The position numbers and the translations under genes are program-made. This document shows, piece by piece, positions 19,426 through 45,410 of a stretch of DNA of 64,000 nucleotides; within the stretch, counting starts at the first letter, position 1, and every line of letters starts with the position of its first letter. The DNA is from Leidyana gryllorum EB-2025a (taxonomy: Eukaryota; Protista; Apicomplexa), in contig JBLWGC010000002.1 of NCBI GenBank assembly GCA_048772705.1, forward strand, positions 230,729 through 294,728, given 5' to 3'. The notes beneath the pieces are model-generated. The model worked only from the letters and a program-made list of their open reading frames with translations. It was not told the DNA's origin and made no database searches.

Positions 19426-21073
19426 ATGAACGAGGGTAGGAGCGCCGATAATCAAACCTACAACAAAGACCTTCATCACACGTGTGCGGAAGCCAGTGTG
19501 TCTCCGTGGGTACAGCATCAAGCAGTGCCATGGTGTGTTTTGGCGCTTGCCCTCGGCCTAGCAGGATGGCTACTGGCATCTTTAGTGCTGCCGTTGGTAG
19601 CGGCGTTCATCTTGTGCGTTCCGCTGTTACCCTGCCGCGATGATGCTCAAAAGGGTGATCTGAGTTGGCGATCTAGTTTGAAGTATGCCTGGATCAATGC
19701 TCGGAAACGTTCGGTACTCAAGAAGCGTAGATCTATGACACTGCTGAGTGTTGCTGTTCAAGCTTTCCTTGCGTGTGTGTTGGCTCACTGCCTTCTTCCA
19801 CAATGGTGGCACGGCCTAATTCGCGTGTTGTGTGTGCTACCTCTCGCCAAGGAACTCGAGCATGGGTATCATCTGATGACAGATCTGCTGGGGGGAATCC
19901 GATGGCGACCGACGGGATCATATGCGACACGTTCTGTGGTGGTATGTATGGAAAGTGTGTGTGGTCTTACTTGACCCCCTGCCAGGTCTTAAGTCTATTG
20001 GGTGCCGTAGGTGGTCTTGCCACCGCAGTATTGATGGGGCTGGTGATCTTAGAAGTATGGAACATATCGGACGATCGAGTACCCGGTCATACCGGACCCA
20101 TGACTAAATACGCTGAGTGGACGGAGACAGCTGTTTCCCAAACGCCTTGGCGACTATTGAGTATCGAGTCGAGTCAAGACTTGAGCACGGTAGCTGTAGA
20201 TATTCGCACTGCGCTATTTGGCGCGGTTGGAAGTATTTGTACTGCGCTCACAGCTATCTATTATATACTATGTGCCCAGCGAACGCCTTGGGACTACGTG
20301 CAGATGGTGAGAGGAGGAGAGGAATCTGCTGAGATAATGTTGTGTGGTGAACAGGCAGGAGAAGTCGCGAAATTACCCAATCTAACAGATCGATTACAGA
20401 AGGGTGTGACAAGCGTCCTCAAATGCACTGCAGAGCGCGTAACTGTTTATGGGTACGCAAGTCAGGGCTTGTTGGAGGGAATGATCGCTCCTATTTCAGA
20501 CTCGCAGGTTTCTGTGTGGCAATTTTAATCGGTTGGCCTACACCCTTTTTGTATGGTGTGATTAGTGCCTGGCTCGGACTCACTCTGGCTGTGCCCCCAG
20601 AAGGTTTTTTTCTGATTACTGCTTGGAGAGAATGTGACAGTGCGACATTATTGAATGTCGTCGTACTGGCGATAATTACTATTTACAGTGTGTAAGTTTA
20701 TGTTTATGTGTCACACATCGGACAACGTTGGATACGGGAGTGTGTGTGCGCTGTGTTGTGTCATAGTACCGCTCTGATGCTTCCCTGCAGCATTTCGTTT
20801 TGGTATGTTCCCATTTTGATTCACTCCAAGAGTGGGCATTTGAACCCGTATTTGTTCGCTTTGCTGTTGGTGGCTGGGGGTCGCGAAATGGGCCTTCCTG
20901 GCGTGATCATTGCGCCATGCTTGGGTTTGGTGCCCACAGAGCTTCTGGAAGCGACTTGGGCGAGCATTCCCTTGAGCAGGACGCATCTCAGTCCGATGCC
21001 GGAACGGACCCCCTGTGGTTCACGTATGTCAACCCAGACCCCCGCTACACCAGCGGAGCACAAAGAAGAGTGA
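19426..21073 (+). CDS. TMEM245/AI-2E-like multi-pass membrane protein (multi-exon)
   Basis: Many hydrophobic helices. C-terminal GHLNPYLFALLLVAGGREMGLPGVIIAPCLG resembles the TMEM245 motif HPYLTGLAVAGG...GLEGAIIGP. Introns near 19942-19985, 20453-20499 and 20692-20790. Confidence 0.7.
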
Positions 21074-21118
21074 TAAGGTTTTCCGAAAGTGAGTCCCAGA
21101 GGCTGTTAGAGGTGGCTA

Positions 21119-23302
21119 ATGCTGCTGTCCATCCCTAGCGAGGTATTGAGGGAGCTAGTGGCTTTTCTGGCTCCATCCGAAGTATGTTTGAAGATTGCCC
21201 CACTATGCCGTGCTGGTAGGCACTTTGTGGATCAGCTGTACTGGCCCCTGTACTTGGACATTGTTTGCGATGATTTAATTCGTATCACGCGGCCCATTCT
21301 GGCGCTCCCTCCCTTACATGACAACATAGTTGGACCTATCCAGCCACAACCGCACAATATCTGGTTTTTGCATGTTCAATGCGAGAAACGTCGACGATGG
21401 CACCGACGTCGGCTGGGTGATTGCGATTCGGACGCAGATGGCAGCGAAGCGCCCAGAAGTTTGGCCCAATCCACTCAACCGGCCGATCCACACTGCCCTT
21501 TCACGCAGTTACGCAGTATGGCGAGGGACACTTTTGTCTACATGACTCTCTCACAGCCGCCCCGCGATATGCCAGGATGGTTGGTCAGAGCTCTCAAACA
21601 CGTTCGCAGTCTCACCTATATGGGAGCTGATCGTCCCTTCCGCCACAGCCTTTTAGCGCGGCAGCTCTTCGGTCAAGCTCAGACCCCTTCATCATCATCG
21701 AAACCCTCCTCTTCCCCCATACACGAACATTTGTCCCTCTTGGATTATTTTCAGGTGCTGTTCGCAAATCATGGCAGTCTCGTCACCTTCCATCTTGAAT
21801 GCTCTGCCAAGTTCAGCAGCTTCATCAACGGACCTGAAATCCCGCGCTGTCCGCGCTCCCTTTTGGTGGATAAGGATCTCGCAAGTTATCCTGTAGGTTC
21901 CTCGACACGCAGCAGTGAACAGAGCTTGGACGGCTCAGGACACCTCTTGGGATTAGAGAATGAAATCCACTGGGAGTGCTGGACGCGCCTGTTGAATCAG
22001 ACGGTCCGTCAGTGGAAAGGTGATTTTACTGAGCTCAGAACAGCGAATCTGAGCGGGTCCTATCTGCCCGCCGCCTTGGCCATTCTCAGCTCCGTTGGCG
22101 CTCGCTTCCCCAAACTCAAGAAGCTCACCATCAGAGGAGTGATAGCTATCGGGAAGTTTGGACTGGAAACCCTCAGGCAGATCGCCGCTTGCCCGACACC
22201 TCCCTCAGACGAAGAAAGCGACGGAATACCGGCCAATCCCCCAACATGGTGGCTACAGGATGTGCTCGCCGCACTGTTACTCGCAAATGACCCCTTTCGC
22301 TGTGTCAGTGTGGTCCAGGACAGGGCGACTATAACGGACAGAACTTGGTACTGGGCGAAGAAGCTGACTCAGTTCTTCACACAGAAGAATTTCCCCGTTC
22401 TCGAGGAGCTGGTACTGCACGTGGGTCACGCCAGCCCCGAAAGACGCCTCTGGTGGTCGCTACTGATGGCCGACCTCTTCCTGTCAGACACACTCAGAAC
22501 ATTGGAGTTCGACTGTTCAGCCGAAAGTTTGACCCGCGCAGTGGCTCCGAGTGAGCACCCCTGGCCAGACGGACCCCCCAACGTGTCAAACCTGGGCATT
22601 CTCAGTTCTCTCACTGTACCCACGTGCAGATTCCCGAAATTGAAGGTCATTAGGCTGGCAATTGCTTACAGTGTGTTGGATCTGGCGCGAGTTCAGCGAC
22701 AACTAAATGAAGCATTGGCAAATCCAAACATCACAATCCAAGTCCGAAGACTTCACCTATTCGTACTTTCAAGGGACTTGAACGCACAAGCTGACCTTTT
22801 CGAGCGATGGGAGGAAGAGCAACGCAACCTGATGCCTTTCGCTGAAACTGTCAGCATGTTCCCCTCAGGAGGAGTGCTGGAATTGGATTTCTCAGAAACG
22901 CCTCCAATGACACCTAGACATGCTCGCAACAATTGCTTGACCCCCAGATCAGCTTGGAATCCGGACGACGCAAGTGATTTTCCCCTACGCTTTGGCAATA
23001 TACGAAAACTTCACTTGGTGAATCTGGTACCCGGATCCAAGGCTCATCGTAAAATCTTGTCCCGACTCTGCTTTGATGGGTCCGTCCTTGAGACAGTGTC
23101 AGTGAGATGTGCCGAGAACAGCTGTGGCGAAGATCCCCCCTTTTGCGCGGAACAATTCCTTCGGCAACTTCCTTCGTTCTCGAACAAGGATATACAAATC
23201 ACTAGGCCAAAATATACCCTGACTCCCAGCGCCCATCCCTTTGATAATCCAGCGAGCTCAAAAAATGCGCATTCGAGGGTCGGGAGAGGGCAGTTTTCGT
23301 GA
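21119..23302 (+). CDS. F-box protein with degenerate LRR-like body
   Basis: N-terminus LLSIPSEVLRELVAFLAPSEVCLKIAPLCR fits F-box consensus. Repeated FPxLxxLxI segments (FPKLKKLTI, FPVLEELVL, FPKLKVIRL). Confidence 0.72.
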   Translation: MLLSIPSEVLRELVAFLAPSEVCLKIAPLCRAGRHFVDQLYWPLYLDIVCDDLIRITRPILALPPLHDNIVGPIQPQPHNIWFLHVQCEKRRRWHRRRLGDCDSDADGSEAPRSLAQSTQPADPHCPFTQLRSMARDTFVYMTLSQPPRDMPGWLVRALKHVRSLTYMGADRPFRHSLLARQLFGQAQTPSSSSKPSSSPIHEHLSLLDYFQVLFANHGSLVTFHLECSAKFSSFINGPEIPRCPRSLLVDKDLASYPVGSSTRSSEQSLDGSGHLLGLENEIHWECWTRLLNQTVRQWKGDFTELRTANLSGSYLPAALAILSSVGARFPKLKKLTIRGVIAIGKFGLETLRQIAACPTPPSDEESDGIPANPPTWWLQDVLAALLLANDPFRCVSVVQDRATITDRTWYWAKKLTQFFTQKNFPVLEELVLHVGHASPERRLWWSLLMADLFLSDTLRTLEFDCSAESLTRAVAPSEHPWPDGPPNVSNLGILSSLTVPTCRFPKLKVIRLAIAYSVLDLARVQRQLNEALANPNITIQVRRLHLFVLSRDLNAQADLFERWEEEQRNLMPFAETVSMFPSGGVLELDFSETPPMTPRHARNNCLTPRSAWNPDDASDFPLRFGNIRKLHLVNLVPGSKAHRKILSRLCFDGSVLETVSVRCAENSCGEDPPFCAEQFLRQLPSFSNKDIQITRPKYTLTPSAHPFDNPASSKNAHSRVGRGQFS

Positions 23303-39739: not shown

Positions 39740-41006
39740 TAGGCGCGGTCCATTCGTTTCTTGCGCACTGATGGTAATGCGGTTGCGCAACGCTTCATTC
39801 GTGCAGCTGCAGCCGCTGCACTAGCAGCAGCGCGGGTAGATGACACAAGAGCTGACGCCGACGCCGAACTCCCGAAAGACGAAAATCCTCTGCCTGCTCA
39901 AAAGCAAAGTCAATATGGCACACACGTGTGTGGAGCGTGGCGCACAATGTGTTTACAATGATCAATGATTACAATGGTTCAGACGCATTGTGCCTATTAC
40001 TCTTGGTCATAGCCGGTAGAATATGTCAAGCCCACGGCTAATGAACAACTGGAAAATAAGAAGCCACAGTCCGGCAGGTGCCGCAGTCAAACAAGCCCCA
40101 TCATCCGACCGGGCGGCAGCGTCGTGTACAAACACTTGGGGAGGTAATAAGACTACACACGACCATTGATACGGGTACGACAAGTATGATAGAGAATGAT
40201 TGATCATTAGACGTATTAATTATGAGTTACAAAGCAAAATGAGCTCCGCCGCACAGGGAATTCACATTATACGAAACGGGGGAAGCAAGAAGGGCGAGTA
40301 TTCTTTCCACGTTGTCACCAGCACAGGATACGAGGGCATATATTTCAGCAGCAGCAACAGCAGCCGATAGATCGATGAATGAATGAACGAACGAACGAGC
40401 GAGACAGACAAACAGATTCACGATGGCCGCCGGTGACGTACCTGGCATAGAGCTTTGGTCTGACGTGGGCGTCTGAGGCGATGGATGATGGTGTATGGCG
40501 TGCATCATCGTGATAGGATCTATGAGGCGGGAGTGCCTCGGTACCTGGGCCCGGCTGGGCCGGGTGCAGGAAGTGGAGCTAATCAAAGTTTCCAATGGAT
40601 CACTTCCGCAATCACTGTGGCCTCCACTGTCATGTGACAGGCCACTGGCTGTTGTACTGGACCTGTGGGGACATCGCTTCCCATGCTCCGGGCACGACTT
40701 TGCATGATCGAACTTGCGAACATACTCGGTGGACCCACTGAGCGTCGAATCTCGGCGCGGGGGAGCGCTCATCAGGGACTCTGCTTCGAAACTTCCACTT
40801 CGTGAAATAGATGTCACCGGGAAAGCGTCGATGCGTCCCGAGCCGCTTCGCGACGTATTGCTGCTTGGGCTTTCCGAAGTTTGTCCAAGACGGCGGAGGT
40901 GTTGTCTAAGGTTGCAGTTATATTTGCTTCGCCATCGAATCGCAGATGCGGAAGCAGCGGCTGCTCGAGTATTGGTATCAAAAACTGCGCTCTCGACAGT
41001 ACTCAT
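39740..41006 (-). CDS. Possible hypothetical Ser-rich multi-exon gene
   Basis: ORF from ATG 41006 (MSTVESAVF...) and intron-like segments near 40440 and 39893-39956. Structure unresolved. Confidence 0.35.
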
Positions 41007-41031
41007 GGGTTGTTTGCCACCAAAAGTCTTC

Positions 41032-43143
41032 CTACCGCACTGCTGCTGCCTCTTTCTCACCACTGTTCTCTAGGGCTGCTGTTGTTGTTGGTCGTGGCTT
41101 CGCCAGGATGCCCAAAAGGTCGCTCAGATCTTCGGCAATCTCTAAACTGGCGGAGGGATAGGAAGCTTTGAAACTTCGAAGGCTCATATTTCTCAATTTC
41201 ACTTTAAACATGCGGTTCATAAGCCACGTCCGGACGATCACTCCCGTCAGCTGGTAGTCGGTGCAGAAGGTTCCGAAATGGTTCTCGAGGACATACGACA
41301 CATTCCCTTCTTCCTGGCCCGGTAGATAAGAGCTCAGAATGATGGGCAACGATCGAGTCGTAGCCTCGGCTATAGTGCCCGGACCCGCCTTGCTGATCAA
41401 AAGGTCACTCGCCGTCATCAGATCGTGCATATGGTTCGTAAAACCGTACACCACGACCCTCACCCGGAACGGTGTGACTGCGTGTGCCTCCAAAATCCGC
41501 TGGCACTCTTGGATTCGTTTCTGATCCTCGAGATCCTGACCTTCGGGCAGCGCGTCTTTGGGCCGCAGAAGCACCGAATCGTCCATTTCCGGGCTGCTCT
41601 CAGTCTTAGCCGCTGCGGTCAGATCCGTATACCCCACTGGCCCCATCAAGGATAAATCGTCTTCTTCAAGTTGCTTAAAGATCGCTCTCAATGTTGCCGA
41701 ATCCTCGCTCGCGCACCTCCGAAGTCGCGTAGGCTCCTCAGAGATAGGCGGTGACTGCGGCAGCACAGGGACGGAAGCCTCGCGCCGATTCCCTCCCACC
41801 ATACTGGGTGTCATCCCCAACAGATCGACATCGCTCAGCGCGCGCACAGCCGGTGAAAGGCAGGGCTTACAGGGGGCGTCTGCGTTGAAACGAGAATGGG
41901 ATTTCGAATTGTGGTGTGCGTGTGTGCGTGTCTTACCGGCGGCATTGAGGGAACGGTGGGCTTTGGGCGTATGGATATTGTGAAGCTCATCGGGCGACAG
42001 CGTGTTGGTTGGTGACCCGACGGAGGTGCTGGCGCTGCGTAGACGGCGCTGTCGGTCGCTGGTGGGACGGGCGTCGTCGGAAGAAGAGTCCTGTTTGGCG
42101 ATTCGCGTGTGTGTGGGCGGGGCCTTTTTCGGTTTGCCGCCTTCCAGGTGTTGGTGGTCGGAGGCTGGAGTGGCAAAGTCACTGATAACGACCTGTCCAT
42201 TGTGTATTTTATCTCGTAGTTCGCTCAGTACTCGTTGTCGGAGCTGTTCGTTCTTGCCGCAGATAATGACCAGTTGTAGTGGTACTGTAGTGAGTTCATA
42301 GTCCGGATGGAATAGTTTGTCAATGTCGCCAATTCGGTGCTTGGAGGTTGCTTTGACTCTCGCTTTGAGAGTGTCCTGATCAGCCAGGAAGGTCTCCACT
42401 ACTGAACTAGCTATCAAATCTATGTTGCCAACTCCCTCTCCTCCACCGACGAGGAGAGCGGTTGGCCAGTCCGGACACAGACCGAGACGTTGTCTAACCG
42501 CTGCCTGCATCTGTGGCTTCTGCTGAGGAGATACGCTCTGCCAGAAGTCCCGACGGAGCGGCAGTCCGAATTGGCGTATGTTATTTTCGGAAATGCCCTC
42601 GTGGAGGGCGACTTCCTTGACAGCCCTACTAGGCAGATAGATCCGAGTAGCTTTAGGGTGGAACCAGGTGGGGTGAGCTCCGCCGAGATCAGTCACGATG
42701 GTCACGAACGGGATTCCAGTGCACTTAAGTTCGTGTAGAATCTGCAGAGGCACGTGTTGGCAGAGGGGGTGGACAGAAATAATGAGGTCGGGCTTGATGG
42801 TGCTAAAGACTTTGGCAAACGATGTGCCCGAAACAGCGTATCCAGATGATAAGAATAGAGAACGAGAGATCGGGGATTGACTGGACTCGTACATCACTTT
42901 CCAGCACCAAGGATTCTCAGACGCGAATCTATAAATGGGAACAAACGCGTTGAAGGGCCAGCTGCCATACGTCGTCCACAAATCCAATATACTGATATCC
43001 AGCGCGTCGGGTCCATAAACTTCCTCCAACGCGTCGCTAATCGCGCGAGCTGACGCCCGATGCCCGCCACCCGTATCACTCAGTAAAATCAACACGCGCC
43101 GTTTGTAGTCAGACGTCACATCGCTCGCACTGTGTGCACACAT
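41032..43143 (-). CDS. Plant/algal-type monogalactosyldiacylglycerol (MGDG) synthase (GT28) with a large insertion; alternative start 43326
   Basis: VLILLSDTGGGHRASA, KPDLIISVHPLCQHVPL, IPFVTIVTDL...HPTWFHP, FGLPLR, LLVGGGEGVG, IICGKN, LLISKAGPGTIAEA...LPIIL...GQEEGNV. These match MGD1-type motifs in order. Confidence 0.92.
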   Translation of the reverse strand: MCAHSASDVTSDYKRRVLILLSDTGGGHRASARAISDALEEVYGPDALDISILDLWTTYGSWPFNAFVPIYRFASENPWCWKVMYESSQSPISRSLFLSSGYAVSGTSFAKVFSTIKPDLIISVHPLCQHVPLQILHELKCTGIPFVTIVTDLGGAHPTWFHPKATRIYLPSRAVKEVALHEGISENNIRQFGLPLRRDFWQSVSPQQKPQMQAAVRQRLGLCPDWPTALLVGGGEGVGNIDLIASSVVETFLADQDTLKARVKATSKHRIGDIDKLFHPDYELTTVPLQLVIICGKNEQLRQRVLSELRDKIHNGQVVISDFATPASDHQHLEGGKPKKAPPTHTRIAKQDSSSDDARPTSDRQRRLRSASTSVGSPTNTLSPDELHNIHTPKAHRSLNAAGKTRTHAHHNSKSHSRFNADAPCKPCLSPAVRALSDVDLLGMTPSMVGGNRREASVPVLPQSPPISEEPTRLRRCASEDSATLRAIFKQLEEDDLSLMGPVGYTDLTAAAKTESSPEMDDSVLLRPKDALPEGQDLEDQKRIQECQRILEAHAVTPFRVRVVVYGFTNHMHDLMTASDLLISKAGPGTIAEATTRSLPIILSSYLPGQEEGNVSYVLENHFGTFCTDYQLTGVIVRTWLMNRMFKVKLRNMSLRSFKASYPSASLEIAEDLSDLLGILAKPRPTTTAALENSGEKEAAAVR

Positions 43144-45410
43144 ACCCGACGAGCTGGACGACGAGAAAAATTCAACCAGATTGTGCCATTTCACGCCCAA
43201 ACGCCACACCCCATTCGCCACCGGGTGTCCTGGGAAGTGTTCGGACCGTTCTGTCCCCTGCCATTTTTTTTTCCTATCTAACCCATAAATATATCTTACC
43301 TTGCCACCATTTCCCTCCCGTTGCATGTGTGTGTTATCTGATCGACCAAGAGGGCGTTTTAAAGACTACCAGAAGCCTCACCTTCTGGCAAGCAGAACTG
43401 ATGCCCCAAATTGACTCGTCCGGGCGCTATCAAACGGGCAGACCCAACCCTCTCTGTTCAACTTGCGTGCGTTCGATACATTGAAGACCAATGATTTCCT
43501 CTACTGACCCAATCACTTGGTGTCCCGGGCCGACGCTCTAAAGGTGGGACAGCCGCGCTGCTGCCCCCAACCGCAAAGCCCAACAACGACTGGTCGACAG
43601 GTGGCTGATTGGAGCTCTCCAGACTCCTTCTAGTCGAATCCTCGTTCCTACATTCCTTCAATTGCTTCCTCGGACTTTCGAAGGCCTCCTTCCAGCGCTC
43701 TAATCGCCAAGGTGGTTCATTCAAGTCCCATATAAATTCAATTGCTTTCTAAGGTGGTTCGTTGGCGTCTAATACCTAACCGTCTCCGAGTCTAATCCGA
43801 TAGCATACATCCCTACACACTGCTAACCGGGCTCCCTTTTCCATCTGATTGATGCTCAATCGTACATCAACCAGCGCGGGGAGACCCAATAATGACGGGT
43901 ATCAATAGTGGTCGCCTGCGGCGTGCATCCGCTGTGTGATCGAATCCTCTGCCCCACACTCCACCAATCGTCAACCACCCCGAATTTCAGGCCTCACAAA
44001 CTTCGGGACCCGAAATCAGCTTCGCGAGCCTCTGTAATCAACGTGCGCTTTCGCAAAGCACGAGGCGCGGCGCCCATCATTTGGGTCGCAGAGTTAGTCT
44101 ACCATAAGTATCTCACTCAAAAAACCCCTATAGTCAGCTACCCCCCTATAGTCAGCAACCCACAATCCGCAGTTCAAATTGTGGAGCCCACACCGCGTCG
44201 AGCGTGCTGGTAAGCACATAGGCTGGGGTTAGTACTGTTGAGATTTTTGATTACTTGTGAACCCAATTGAGATGACTATAATTGGGACGACTCGTATCCC
44301 ATGGAAGCCACTTGGTCTACCCCAATCGCCTAACCGACATCGGGGCCGGTCAGAAAGCGGACAAAGTTTTATCCGGACCTACTCCGGTGTTGGGCATATC
44401 AAGTCAGGGCGTCGTTAGGTTAGTCTTGCCTCTGCCCACTGCCCTCCACAGATCTGAGCCGAGTGCGCATCAACTTACTGCGTACAGTAAAAGAACAACA
44501 AATGGTAAACTCCATCTGGCACACGTGTGTGTAATGTCGCGGGTCCCCCAAGGGGGGTAGATGGTCGTGCCTAGCGCCTCAGAAGGATAATTGGCATCCA
44601 TAGCCACACTCCAGGCTCGGCAGTTACCACAGAAAGTAGATGCAAAACTTGGTTCCCTCAGTACCAGCAGAGAAGCACATGTCGGCATATGCTGGATTGG
44701 CACTACCCTACCGACGTAAGATGCGGTGGGCGAAGAACGGTGTGAATATAGGACGGTCGTCAGTTGCTCTCCACGGGCCGAAAGATTGCAGAGGGGGGTC
44801 AGGCCAGTCCTAAGGGCGGCTCAGGTGCGAATCGGGGTACCCGCTCAGCTTTTTTCTGAACCTCGGTCCCCATCGATGAGGTCGGTTTCATAAGCGGGAT
44901 AGACGGAGATGGAAAGGTGGTGTCATCAGTCACCAAAGAACAGCATCGCAAGTGAACGTCTGCCTCAGCCTCCTCCCCTGTCCACCCAGCGCTATCTGAC
45001 GTGGAGGTTCCCCAGTTGCTTCTCGGAAAACATTGTCGTTCACTCTCCCCATTCTACGACCCCGAAGGCGCGCAAACGATGCAGACAGAAGGCGGGATGC
45101 ATGCTGACACCTGCCGTCACCTCTTAACACTCGGCTGACGTGCCGGATTAGATCTGAGTCGCAGTGAGCTGCTTTGTGATTCCAAGATACCTCAATCTAC
45201 CGTGAAGTATGATGTGTGTGTGTGTGTGTGTGTTGGCAGAGCACATTGGATGGCTGTGCGCGGCACCCTCTGTGGCCAATTTGGCATATACGCAACGATC
45301 AGCAGAGGTATCACTCAGGAGGTGTTGTAAGTAGCGGGTACTGTGTCAGTGCCCCACCTGGGTTTGAGTAGCAGATCCGGTGAGGGAAAAGTTCGCTACA
45401 CTGAGACGCG

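What the first reader, a model, noticed from the sequence alone, without database searches (positions are those of the whole stretch)
41032..43326. Chloroplast-type MGDG (galactolipid) synthase with no visible plastid-targeting leader
Seen: a full ordered set of MGD1-type motifs. Only about 15 aa precede the catalytic domain from Met 43143, and the longer start (43326) has no hydrophobic signal peptide. Established: this GT28 subfamily makes the main thylakoid lipid in plants and algae, and proteins for complex plastids need a signal plus transit peptide. Inference: in what looks like a non-photosynthetic protist, this may be a plastid-derived enzyme relocated to make glycolipid on non-plastid membranes, or one with changed sugar or acceptor specificity. 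MGD-like genes may already be noted in some non-photosynthetic protists, so novelty needs checking.
Basis: partly seen in the sequence, partly recalled or inferred. Interest (0 to 1): 0.85.

Follow-up and report, generated by a model that had tools for sequence, protein, structure and literature searches.

The report
Leaderless galactolipid synthase in plastid-less gregarine
A gut parasite related to the malaria agent has lost its chloroplast-derived organelle but still carries an intact gene, without any organelle address label, for the enzyme that makes the main chloroplast membrane lipid, so it probably now makes a sugar-lipid on other cell membranes.

Summary
Window 41032-43326 (-) is one uninterrupted 764-aa ORF encoding a true MGD1-type GT28 enzyme: Pfam MGDG_synth, Arabidopsis MGD1 E 1.5e-72, Foldseek TM 0.88. 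It keeps 62 of 65 positions that are conserved in 112 algal MGDs.

The genome is a 15.5-Mb gregarinoid eugregarine. Six-frame searches find no IspH, DXR, SufB, Tic20, Tic22, FabZ, FabH or plastid-type 16S. UDP-glucose 4-epimerase is present.

Seven orthologues, from Gregarina, Protomagalhaensia and three unnamed assemblies, form a clade. That clade is sister to an unnamed transcriptome protein and then to photosynthetic Vitrella (95/97), inside the red-plastid MGDs. This fits inheritance from the plastid-bearing ancestor.

All gregarine copies have 5-30 aa before the catalytic domain, and no signal peptide. Vitrella has 153 aa and algae a median of 113.

Two gregarine-specific features stand out:
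- A remodelled membrane/diacylglycerol-capture loop.
- A disordered insert of about 210 aa, rich in R-x-x-S sites.

Most likely it is an active glycolipid synthase, probably making MGDG, on non-plastid membranes.

The G. niphandrodes orthologue is annotated and appears in one published tree, but I found no discussion of it. The scan had separately noted the insert on this same stretch.

The parts
41032..43326 (-). Whole open reading frame, 764 aa from the first ATG: MGD-type GT28 glycosyltransferase
43144..43326 (-). Optional 61-aa N-terminal extension (Met1 to Gly61). It is non-hydrophobic, predicted disordered and has no counterpart in any orthologue. The start codon is ambiguous.
   Evidence: coding score 0.095 bits/codon against 0.006+-0.06 for upstream windows
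43141..43143 (-). Second ATG (Met62), 15 aa before the domain. This is the position where the orthologues start.
42391..43104 (-). N-terminal Rossmann-like domain (residues 75-312), the acceptor side
   Evidence: PF06925; pLDDT >90; aligned to 4wyi residues 3-236
43048..43080 (-). Glycine loop SDTGGGHRASA, with Thr85, catalytic His89 and Arg90 (= AtMGD1 T151, H155, R156)
42799..42978 (-). Membrane-binding / diacylglycerol-capture LOOP (residues 117-176 = AtMGD1 about 182-240). W117, W123, P124 and F125 are kept. Fourteen gregarine-conserved residues are rare in algae.
   Evidence: Fisher p 4e-6
42280..42390 (-). Gregarine-specific insert 1 (residues 313-349), about 37 aa, shared by all eight gregarine sequences
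41545..42171 (-). Gregarine-specific insert 2 (residues 386-594), about 210 aa. It is disordered, rich in Ser/Pro/Ala, and carries five R-x-x-S sites and a weakly shared R-x-x-S-[DE]-x-D motif. It is absent from P0006 and from all algal MGDs.
41077..41544 (-). C-terminal Rossmann-like domain (residues 595-750), the UDP-sugar side
   Evidence: PF04101; 4wyi residues 267-396; pLDDT >90
41302..41391 (-). Nucleotide-sugar binding motifs KAGPGTIAE ... PGQEEGN (residues 646-675), invariant across gregarines and algae
43327..45410 (.). About 2.1 kb gene-poor divergent upstream region. It holds no convincing leader exon; the only weak candidate is the ATG at 44688.

Best explanation
The gene encodes a catalytically competent, soluble-monotopic GT-B glycosyltransferase of the plastid MGDG-synthase (MGD) lineage. 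It was inherited from the plastid-bearing ancestor shared with chromerids and kept after this eugregarine lineage lost the plastid.

It has no signal or transit peptide and no transmembrane segment. It should therefore be made in the cytosol and dock through its N-domain loop onto the cytosolic face of a non-plastid membrane that holds diacylglycerol and an anionic lipid. That membrane could be the ER, the pellicle/inner membrane complex or another endomembrane.

There His89 would deprotonate the sn-3 hydroxyl of diacylglycerol. The hexose of a UDP-sugar held by the C-domain would be transferred with inversion, giving a beta-hexosyl-diacylglycerol. The donor is most probably UDP-galactose, which the genome's own UDP-glucose 4-epimerase can supply.

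The gregarine-specific remodelling of the capture loop is read as adaptation to the new membrane or lipid pool. The large disordered insert with basophilic kinase sites is read as a regulatory add-on.

Shown here: family, fold, intact catalytic residues, orthologues, phylogeny, lack of a leader in the ORF, and absence of plastid markers. Inferred: enzymatic activity, donor sugar, product, location and regulation.
For: Family and fold:
- PF06925, 101.6 bits.
- AtMGD1 E 1.5e-72.
- AlphaFold core pLDDT >90.
- Foldseek 4wyi/4x1t E 3.6e-23, TM 0.88, with MurG next at 2e-7.

Catalysis:
- 62 of 65 columns that are at least 95% conserved in 112 algal MGDs are kept in this protein, and 58 in all eight gregarine sequences.
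- The counterparts of T151, H155, R156, W182, W188, P189 and F190, which PMC7419546 describes as functional, are all kept.

Conservation and expression in relatives:
- Seven orthologues at 43-53% identity overall (up to 62% over the conserved core columns).
- Three come from trophozoite transcriptomes of cockroach gregarines.
- An exhaustive profile search gives four gregarine-type clusters at 820-1018 bits, then Vitrella at 461.

Origin:
- Careful ML tree: eukaryotic MGDs 100/99, red-secondary clade 97/95, Vitrella+(GHVO+gregarines) 95/97, gregarines 99/97.
- The AU test rejects gregarines outside the algal MGDs (p 0.010).

No leader:
- Extensions of 5-30 aa in gregarines, against 153 aa in Vitrella and a median of 113 aa in 102 algae.
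- In-frame stops just upstream in five related loci.
- No TM segment.

No plastid:
- IspH, DXR, SufB, Tic20, FabZ, FabH and Tic22 are absent.
- The only SSU rRNA hits are nuclear 18S.
- This agrees with the literature on Gregarina and most eugregarines.

Donor supply: GalE at 378 bits, over its cut-off, with best hits in Protomagalhaensia and Gregarina at 70-71%.

Precedent for MGD outside plastids: diatom MGD-gamma localises to the ER and epiplastid membrane.

Loop remodelling: 14 of 60 loop columns against 12 of 310 elsewhere, p 4e-6.
Against: - There is no RNA, protein, activity or lipid evidence for this organism. One weak signal-like ORF exists at 44688.
- Close Chloroflexi paralogues of this family differ in donor sugar, UDP-Gal versus UDP-Glc, so family membership does not fix the product.
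- No DGDG-synthase candidate was found among the four GT4/GT5 loci. A classical MGDG-to-DGDG pathway is therefore not supported, and the role of the lipid is open.
- Absence of plastid markers rests on one draft assembly of unknown completeness.
- Tree placement was sensitive to long bacterial outgroup branches in a first quick tree.
- The group tested by AU was chosen after the tree had been seen.
Confidence: 0.65

Rival explanations
1. Same fold, different chemistry. The enzyme is active but has changed its donor (for example to UDP-glucose) or its acceptor (for example to ceramide, a sterol or another lipid). It would then make a glycolipid other than MGDG on non-plastid membranes.
For: - Lineage-specific, conserved substitutions are concentrated in the acceptor/membrane loop. 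They include positions that are 62-93% conserved in algae: A to S136, K to E137, F to S151, Y to S148.
- Donor specificity is known to flip between close GT28 paralogues in Roseiflexus.
- No DGDG synthase was found to use MGDG.
Against: - The UDP-sugar-binding C-domain motifs are invariant with galactose-using algal and plant MGDs.
- W188, P189, F190, T151 and H155, which contact diacylglycerol and phosphatidylglycerol in AtMGD1 models, are kept.
- GalE is retained together with MGD in the same gregarines.
Confidence: 0.15
2. A cryptic plastid-derived compartment persists, and the enzyme is sent there by an unannotated upstream exon or by a non-canonical route.
For: - Some eugregarines (lecudinids, urosporids) keep a genome-less plastid.
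- The transcript's 5' end is unverified.
- A 2-kb gene-poor region lies upstream, with one weakly hydrophobic ATG-ORF at 44688.
- MGD is otherwise regarded as specific to plastid membranes.
Against: - No Tic20, Tic22, FabZ, FabH, IspH, DXR or SufB, so not even the FASII-only type of plastid is supported.
- Short leaderless N-termini bounded by in-frame stops occur in five related loci, and three trophozoite transcriptome-derived ORFs are equally short.
- Gregarina is reported to lack the organelle.
Confidence: 0.1
3. The gene was acquired sideways from an alga or a bacterium by an ancestor of gregarinoid eugregarines, or is contamination, rather than being a relic of the apicomplexan plastid.
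For: - Only gregarinoid-type sequences were found among apicomplexan parasites.
- Botte et al. found no homologues in other apicomplexan parasite genomes.
- The first quick tree did not join the gregarines to Vitrella.
Against: - Sister relation to Vitrella at 95/97 in the careful tree.
- AU rejects exclusion from the algal MGDs.
- Chloroflexota sequences form the outgroup at 100/99.
- The gene sits in a contig of at least 290 kb with ordinary eukaryotic neighbours and uniform composition.
- Orthologues occur in at least five other gregarine data sets, with a shared insert.
Confidence: 0.06
4. The protein is a decaying or non-enzymatic relic, a pseudo-enzyme or scaffold with no glycolipid product.
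For: There is no direct activity data. The long disordered insert splits the C-domain. The enzyme's normal organelle is absent.
Against: - The frame is intact over 764 codons.
- 62 of 65 family-conserved positions, including all catalytic and nucleotide-sugar motifs, are kept across eight diverged species.
- One orthologue (P0006) lacks the big insert yet keeps the same core.
- The gene is expressed in trophozoites of relatives.
Confidence: 0.04

Closest known systems
Arabidopsis thaliana MGD1 (type A MGDG synthase; PDB 4wyi, 4x1t)
   Same: GT28, GT-B double Rossmann fold. It shares the catalytic His in the GGGH loop, the W-P-F residues of the lipid-capture loop and the KAGPGT and PGQExGN nucleotide-sugar motifs. 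It is also monotopic, with no TM segment. E 1.5e-72, TM 0.88.
   Different: AtMGD1 carries a chloroplast transit peptide and works on the inner envelope. The gregarine protein has no leader, the organism has no plastid, the capture loop carries 14 lineage-specific conserved changes, and inserts of about 37 and 210 aa interrupt the linker and the C-domain.
Vitrella brassicaformis MGD (P0008), the nearest named plastid-targeted relative
   Same: Next sister lineage in the tree after the unnamed protein P0041 (95/97). It is the best non-gregarine hit (343 and 461 bits) and shares GGGEGVG instead of GGGDGVG.
   Different: Vitrella has a 153-aa extension that opens with a hydrophobic signal-like segment, and it lacks the gregarine inserts.
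Gregarina niphandrodes XP_011130274 (P0007), 'monogalactosyldiacylglycerol synthase, partial'
   Same: It is an orthologue, up to 62% identical over the core. It has a short N-terminus, both inserts, and comes from a plastid-less host lineage.
   Different: It is a different species. Its gene has an intron after GGGHRASA, which the public model reads through, and its insert sequence is unrelated apart from short motifs. It has been used as a tree tip in PMC11638560 without comment.
Phaeodactylum tricornutum MGD-gamma, and plant type B MGD2/3
   Same: These MGD isoforms act at or outside the plastid surface: ER and epiplastid membrane for MGD-gamma, outer envelope for type B (abstract of PMC4066442). 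They show the fold can work on cytosol-facing membranes.
   Different: Those cells still have plastids, and the isoforms coexist with a thylakoid-serving MGD. Here a single copy exists in a cell with no plastid.
SQDG pathway retained in the plastid-less dictyochophyte Ciliophrys sp. Baltic (bioRxiv 10.64898/2026.03.27.714854)
   Same: It is a conceptual precedent: an enzyme set for a thylakoid structural lipid survives complete plastid loss.
   Different: The lipid and enzymes differ. That organism lacks MGD and DGD, and it is a free-living stramenopile, not an apicomplexan.
Bacterial GT28 relatives: Chloroflexota MGD-like enzymes, Bacillus UgtP, MurG
   Same: They share the superfamily and fold. 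Chloroflexota are the nearest bacterial kin.
   Different: UgtP-type NCBIfam models score 95-107 bits against cut-offs of 500-557. MurG scores 25.7 against 250. The PDB UgtP-like chain gives only E 1.6e-12. The bacterial sequences are separated from the eukaryotic clade by a 100/99 branch.

Membership tests
Eukaryotic MGDG synthase (MGD, CAZy GT28) | Match to the MGDG_synth N-terminal domain model above the curated threshold, plus a GT28 C-terminal domain | tested here: met
   PF06925 scores 101.6 bits against a cut-off of 25. PF04101 scores 32.1 against 22.
Eukaryotic MGDG synthase (MGD, CAZy GT28) | GT-B fold closest to solved MGD1 | tested here: met
   Foldseek gives 4wyi/4x1t at E 3.6e-23 and target TM 0.88, far ahead of MurG. 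Core pLDDT is above 90.
Eukaryotic MGDG synthase (MGD, CAZy GT28) | Catalytic His155 and neighbours (T151, R156), plus loop residues W188/P189 needed for activity and activation by phosphatidylglycerol | tested here: met
   T85, H89, R90, W123 and P124 are present. 62 of 65 family-conserved columns are kept.
Eukaryotic MGDG synthase (MGD, CAZy GT28) | Phylogenetic position inside the eukaryotic MGD clade | tested here: met
   The eukaryotic clade has 100/99 support. The protein is nested in the red-secondary clade (97/95) and is sister to Vitrella (95/97). AU p is 0.010 against exclusion.
Eukaryotic MGDG synthase (MGD, CAZy GT28) | UDP-galactose:1,2-diacylglycerol 3-beta-galactosyltransferase activity | not testable with these tools
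   This needs an enzyme assay. Donor sugar varies among close bacterial paralogues. GalE is present as a possible UDP-Gal source.
Eukaryotic MGDG synthase (MGD, CAZy GT28) | Plastid envelope or thylakoid location through an N-terminal targeting peptide (bipartite in complex plastids) | tested here: not met
   The extension is 15 or 76 aa with no hydrophobic segment. Orthologues have 5-30 aa bounded by upstream stops. No plastid markers are in the genome. The 5' end is not verified by RNA.
UgtP / YpfP-type processive diglucosyl-diacylglycerol synthase | Equivalog-level match to NCBIfam NF010135 / NF010134 | tested here: not met
   It scores 106.6 and 94.8 bits against cut-offs of 500 and 557. 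The PDB 9wde chain gives only E 1.6e-12.
MurG (lipid I GlcNAc transferase) | Equivalog-level match to TIGR01133 | tested here: not met
   It scores 25.7 bits against a cut-off of 250.25.
Classical galactolipid pathway (MGD plus DGDG synthase) | A DGD1/DGD2-type GT4 enzyme in the same genome | tested here: inconclusive
   PF00534 and PF13692 find the same four loci.
- Two are starch-synthase-like.
- One is PIG-A (PF08288).
- One is a generic GT4, which I read as ALG2-like from its motifs (my own knowledge).
None matched a DGDG synthase in the PDB. I held no DGD query sequence for a direct search.

The most novel reading that the evidence does not exclude
Gregarinoid eugregarines make a genuine plant-type galactolipid with a plastid-derived MGD on non-plastid membranes such as the pellicle or ER. 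They would be the first plastid-free eukaryotes known to run MGD-based galactolipid synthesis. The capture loop would have been re-tuned for the new membrane, and a phospho-regulated disordered insert would control it. This would overturn the statement that apicomplexan parasites have no MGD homologue. It would also give a genetic handle on the old puzzle of galactolipid-like lipids in Apicomplexa.
Probability: 0.45. Interest if true: 0.8.

Novelty: new variant of a known kind. Interest (0 to 1): 0.66.

Why it matters
MGDG synthases are described as conserved in photosynthetic eukaryotes and specific to chloroplast membranes (PMC11638560). The chromerid enzymes were reported to have no identifiable homologues in apicomplexan parasite genomes (PMC3191030). 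Here the enzyme is intact, conserved across several species and leaderless in the very apicomplexans that have lost the plastid.

If it is active, three things follow:
- A plastid lipid enzyme can outlive its organelle by moving to host membranes.
- It adds a second kind of case beside the SQDG pathway of a plastid-less ochrophyte.
- It gives a testable entry point into non-plastid glycoglycerolipids in Apicomplexa, and into how monotopic enzymes are re-tuned for a new membrane.

It is also a clean marker gene for gregarinoid gregarines in insect-gut data.

Tried and rejected

DGDG synthase:
- I had no stored DGD sequence, so I could only inspect all GT4-type hits.
- None looks like DGD, but the test is weak.

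First quick tree:
- It included long bacterial branches (Saccharimonadota, Micropruina, Dormiibacterota) and a 'Zetaproteobacteria' MAG contig that groups with an algal MGD.
- It put the gregarines at the base of the eukaryotes.
- I treated this as a long-branch effect, removed six rows (L010, L029, L048, L078, L088, P0118) and rebuilt.

Other checks that led nowhere or were rejected:
- Identity of P0041 (EukProt record GHVO01068336), the long-branch sister of the gregarine clade, could not be established.
- No synteny was seen with the G. niphandrodes locus.
- A mitochondrial-type presequence was considered because the Gregarina spp. N-termini are basic and Ser-rich. It was rejected as a general feature, because the window protein, P0001 and P0006 have acidic N-termini.
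- A plastid genome was considered because of two inverted bacterial-SSU-model hits on contig C73. It was rejected, because they are nuclear 18S.
- SQD1 was considered for a GalE-like locus (L003). That locus is UDP-glucuronate decarboxylase.
- Start-codon choice (Met1 versus Met62) could not be settled by codon statistics.

Full report
THE OBSERVATION

Window 41032-43326 on the minus strand is one open frame of 764 codons. A stop lies 13 codons before the first ATG.

- Pfam gives MGDG_synth (PF06925) at 101.6 bits against a cut-off of 25, over residues 89-256, plus the GT28 C-terminal domain.
- Against the PDB, the best match is Arabidopsis MGD1 (4wyi) at E 1.5e-72. It aligns in two blocks, residues 73-312 and 619-749. 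The next entry is a UgtP-like glucosyltransferase at only E 1.6e-12.
- NCBIfam models for UgtP-type enzymes and MurG score far below their cut-offs: 95-107 against 500-557, and 25.7 against 250.
- An AlphaFold model built on a 21-sequence alignment is confident over both Rossmann-like halves (pLDDT above 90 for about 75-390 and 595-750). It is disordered over residues 1-66 and 390-591.
- Foldseek returns MGD1 apo and UDP-bound structures first (E 3.6e-23, target TM 0.88), with MurG next at 2e-7.

There is no transmembrane segment anywhere.

IS THE ENZYME INTACT?

I aligned the protein with the 120 best database hits.

- Of 65 columns that are at least 95% conserved in 112 MGDs of plastid-bearing eukaryotes, 62 are kept here and 58 in all eight gregarine sequences.
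- The three gregarine-wide differences are mild. D227T matches the Thr found at that position in Arabidopsis. The others are D297E and L366V.
- PMC7419546 describes functional residues for AtMGD1: the catalytic base H155; T151 and R156; and W182, W188, P189 and F190 of the lipid-capture loop. These map to H89, T85, R90, W117, W123, P124 and F125, and all are present.

WHO IS THE HOST, AND DOES IT HAVE A PLASTID?

The assembly is 15.5 Mb in 237 contigs and holds a single MGD copy.

Identity of the host:
- The closest MGD proteins are from Gregarina spp., Protomagalhaensia and G. niphandrodes.
- An independent gene, UDP-glucose 4-epimerase on another contig, has its best hits in Protomagalhaensia wolfi (71%) and Gregarina sp. 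Poly (70%).
- The organism is therefore a gregarinoid eugregarine. Earlier notes of this scan on other pieces of the genome say the same.

Search for a plastid:
- Six-frame profile searches of the whole assembly find no IspH, DXR, SufB or Tic20.
- They also find no FabZ, FabH or Tic22. The last three matter because lecudinid and urosporid eugregarines keep a genome-less plastid that runs fatty-acid synthesis (PMC9847631).
- The only matches to the bacterial SSU rRNA model are nuclear 18S genes.
- The same method found MGD, GalE, PIG-A and starch-synthase-like genes, so it works on this genome.
- This agrees with published views that Gregarina and most eugregarines lack the organelle. The caveat is that completeness of the assembly is unknown.

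ORIGIN

Nearest bacterial relatives are Chloroflexota, as published for the family (PMC3276260).

- A careful ML tree (44 rows, 435 columns, LG+C20+F+G4) separates eukaryotic MGDs from Chloroflexota at 100/99.
- It nests the gregarines in the red-secondary-plastid clade at 97/95.
- It joins Vitrella with (an unnamed transcriptome protein P0041 + eight gregarine sequences) at 95/97. The gregarine clade has 99/97 support.
- An AU test rejects the best tree in which all 29 plastid-bearing MGDs form a clade that excludes the gregarines (delta lnL 34.6, p 0.010). The group was defined after the tree had been seen.
- A first quick tree, which still held very long bacterial rows, placed the gregarines at the base of the eukaryotes. 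I left out six rows (L010, L029, L048, L078, L088, P0118) for the final tree, so the placement is sensitive to long branches.
- An exhaustive profile search of 1.84 billion cluster representatives finds only four gregarine-type clusters (820-1018 bits). There is then a gap to Vitrella (461) and the algae (at most 419).

The simplest reading is vertical descent from the plastid-bearing ancestor of apicomplexans and chromerids.

THE MISSING LEADER

Length of sequence before the conserved domain:

| Sequence | Residues before the domain | Max hydropathy, 11-aa window |
|---|---|---|
| Seven gregarine orthologues | 5-30 | at most 0.88 |
| This gene, from Met62 | 15 | 0.22 |
| This gene, from Met1 | 76 | 0.63 |
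| Vitrella | 153, with hydrophobic opening | 2.33 |
| 102 algal MGDs | median 113 | not summarised |

- In the five related loci I could read (G. niphandrodes and four Logan contigs from three species), an in-frame stop lies 2-10 codons upstream of the start.
- Three orthologues come from trophozoite transcriptomes (PMC8051059) and are equally short. They also show the gene is expressed in relatives.
- On the minus strand of the 2.1 kb upstream of this gene, only one ATG-ORF is even mildly hydrophobic (at 44688; KD 1.87 over 10 aa).
- Codon statistics do not decide between Met1 and Met62. Met62 matches the start position of the orthologues.
- By eye, the Met1-Met62 stretch holds a GTAAGA donor-like site and a pyrimidine-rich CAG acceptor-like site. 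I did not test these.
- RNA reads could not be consulted.

GREGARINE-SPECIFIC FEATURES

(a) The capture loop. The region equivalent to the AtMGD1 LOOP, which binds the membrane and captures diacylglycerol, is residues 117-176.
- It is almost invariant among gregarines: 44 of 60 columns are conserved in at least 7 of 8 sequences.
- Fourteen of those columns carry residues found in fewer than 10% of algal MGDs. Some replace residues that are 62-93% conserved in algae.
- Only 12 such columns occur in the other 310 core columns (Fisher p 4e-6).
- The nucleotide-sugar side is unchanged.

(b) Insert 1. A roughly 37-aa insert (313-349) is shared by all gregarine sequences.

(c) Insert 2. A roughly 210-aa insert (386-594) follows the CGKNE helix.
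- It is disordered and rich in Ser, Pro and Ala, with five R-x-x-S sites. A short R-x-x-S-[DE]-x-D motif is weakly shared with the other species.
- One orthologue (P0006, 461 aa) lacks it, so it is dispensable for the fold.
- The scan had noted this insert separately (s1-587471).

HOW IT MOST LIKELY WORKS

Shown: an intact MGD-type catalytic core; no targeting peptide in the ORF; no plastid markers; GalE present.

Inferred:
- The protein is made in the cytosol.
- It docks through its loop on the cytosolic face of an endomembrane or the pellicle, at a site that offers diacylglycerol and an anionic lipid.
- It transfers galactose from UDP-Gal with inversion, giving beta-galactosyl-diacylglycerol.
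- The remodelled loop reflects the new membrane, and the insert is a phospho-regulated module.

MGD-gamma of Phaeodactylum already works at the ER and epiplastid membrane, so a cytosol-facing MGD is plausible.

The donor is uncertain, because close Roseiflexus paralogues use UDP-Gal or UDP-Glc. No DGDG synthase candidate was found among the four GT4/GT5 loci, so the product may be an end product or feed an unknown step.

KNOWN OR NEW?

- Full-text searches pairing gregarin* with monogalactosyldiacylglycerol, MGDG, galactolipid or galactosyltransferase returned only one relevant paper. It lists the G. niphandrodes accession among tree tips of 'plastid-containing eukaryotes' without comment.
- Botte et al. 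2011 stated that chromerid MGD and DGD have no identifiable homologues in apicomplexan parasite genomes.
- A 2026 preprint reports a plastid-less ochrophyte that lacks MGD and DGD but keeps the SQDG pathway. That is a conceptual precedent with a different lipid.
- Subscription-journal papers were not searchable, so prior mention elsewhere cannot be excluded.

I class this as a new variant of a known kind. The enzyme family is ordinary. The unusual part is the context and the modifications: a plastid-less host, no leader, a re-tuned loop and a large insert.

VERDICT

- The most likely mechanism is an extraplastidial glycolipid (probably MGDG) synthase, at confidence 0.65.
- Interest is 0.66.

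Noticed in passing
L091:5293-8227 (Gregarina niphandrodes KK211462.1): The public gene model for the orthologue (P0007) reads straight through what looks like an intron just after GGGHRASA. This produces a repetitive HTFVDH stretch. The true continuation is in another frame. The 3' end is duplicated across an assembly gap, which probably explains the 'partial' label.
   Followed up: partly
L029 (JAPPOJ010000077.1, 'Zetaproteobacteria' MAG): A contig binned as a bacterial MAG carries an MGD that groups with an algal MMETSP sequence (P0118) inside the eukaryotic clade. It is probably eukaryotic contamination of the bin, or else a transfer.
   Followed up: no
L092 / L093 (G000 contig C73, 452-5214): Two nuclear rDNA units (18S, 5.8S and the start of 28S) face each other head to head, with truncated 28S pieces between them and a tRNA at the contig start. 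This is either a palindromic rDNA arrangement or an assembly artefact.
   Followed up: partly
L006 (G000 contig C180, about 19765-23205): One open frame combines a weak alpha-amylase catalytic-domain match with GT4/GT5 starch-synthase-like domains. It may be a fused glucan-metabolism enzyme.
   Followed up: partly
window 43150-43300 (-): Inside the Met1-Met62 stretch there is an AAG|GTAAGA donor-like site, and further on a pyrimidine-rich tract ending in CAG. If these were spliced, the Met1 frame would be broken, which would favour Met62 as the start. This was seen by eye only.
   Followed up: no
window 41545-42171 (-): The disordered insert carries five R-x-x-S sites (for example RRLRSAS, NRREAS, LRRCAS). 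The last is followed by a predicted amphipathic helix. This looks like a kinase-regulated segment.
   Followed up: partly
window 40227-41063 (-): A 278-aa Ser/Pro-rich ORF with a GTG start lies directly downstream on the same strand and overlaps the MGD stop by 32 bases. It was not characterised.
   Followed up: no
L003 (G000 contig C51, 175731-176273): A UDP-glucuronate decarboxylase (UDP-xylose synthase) homologue is present, E 5e-71 to the human enzyme. It shows further nucleotide-sugar metabolism in this gregarine.
   Followed up: partly
P0041 (EukProt GHVO01068336): A very long-branched, leaderless (6 aa) MGD from an unnamed transcriptome is sister to the gregarine clade (97/97). Its organism could not be identified here.
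   Followed up: partly
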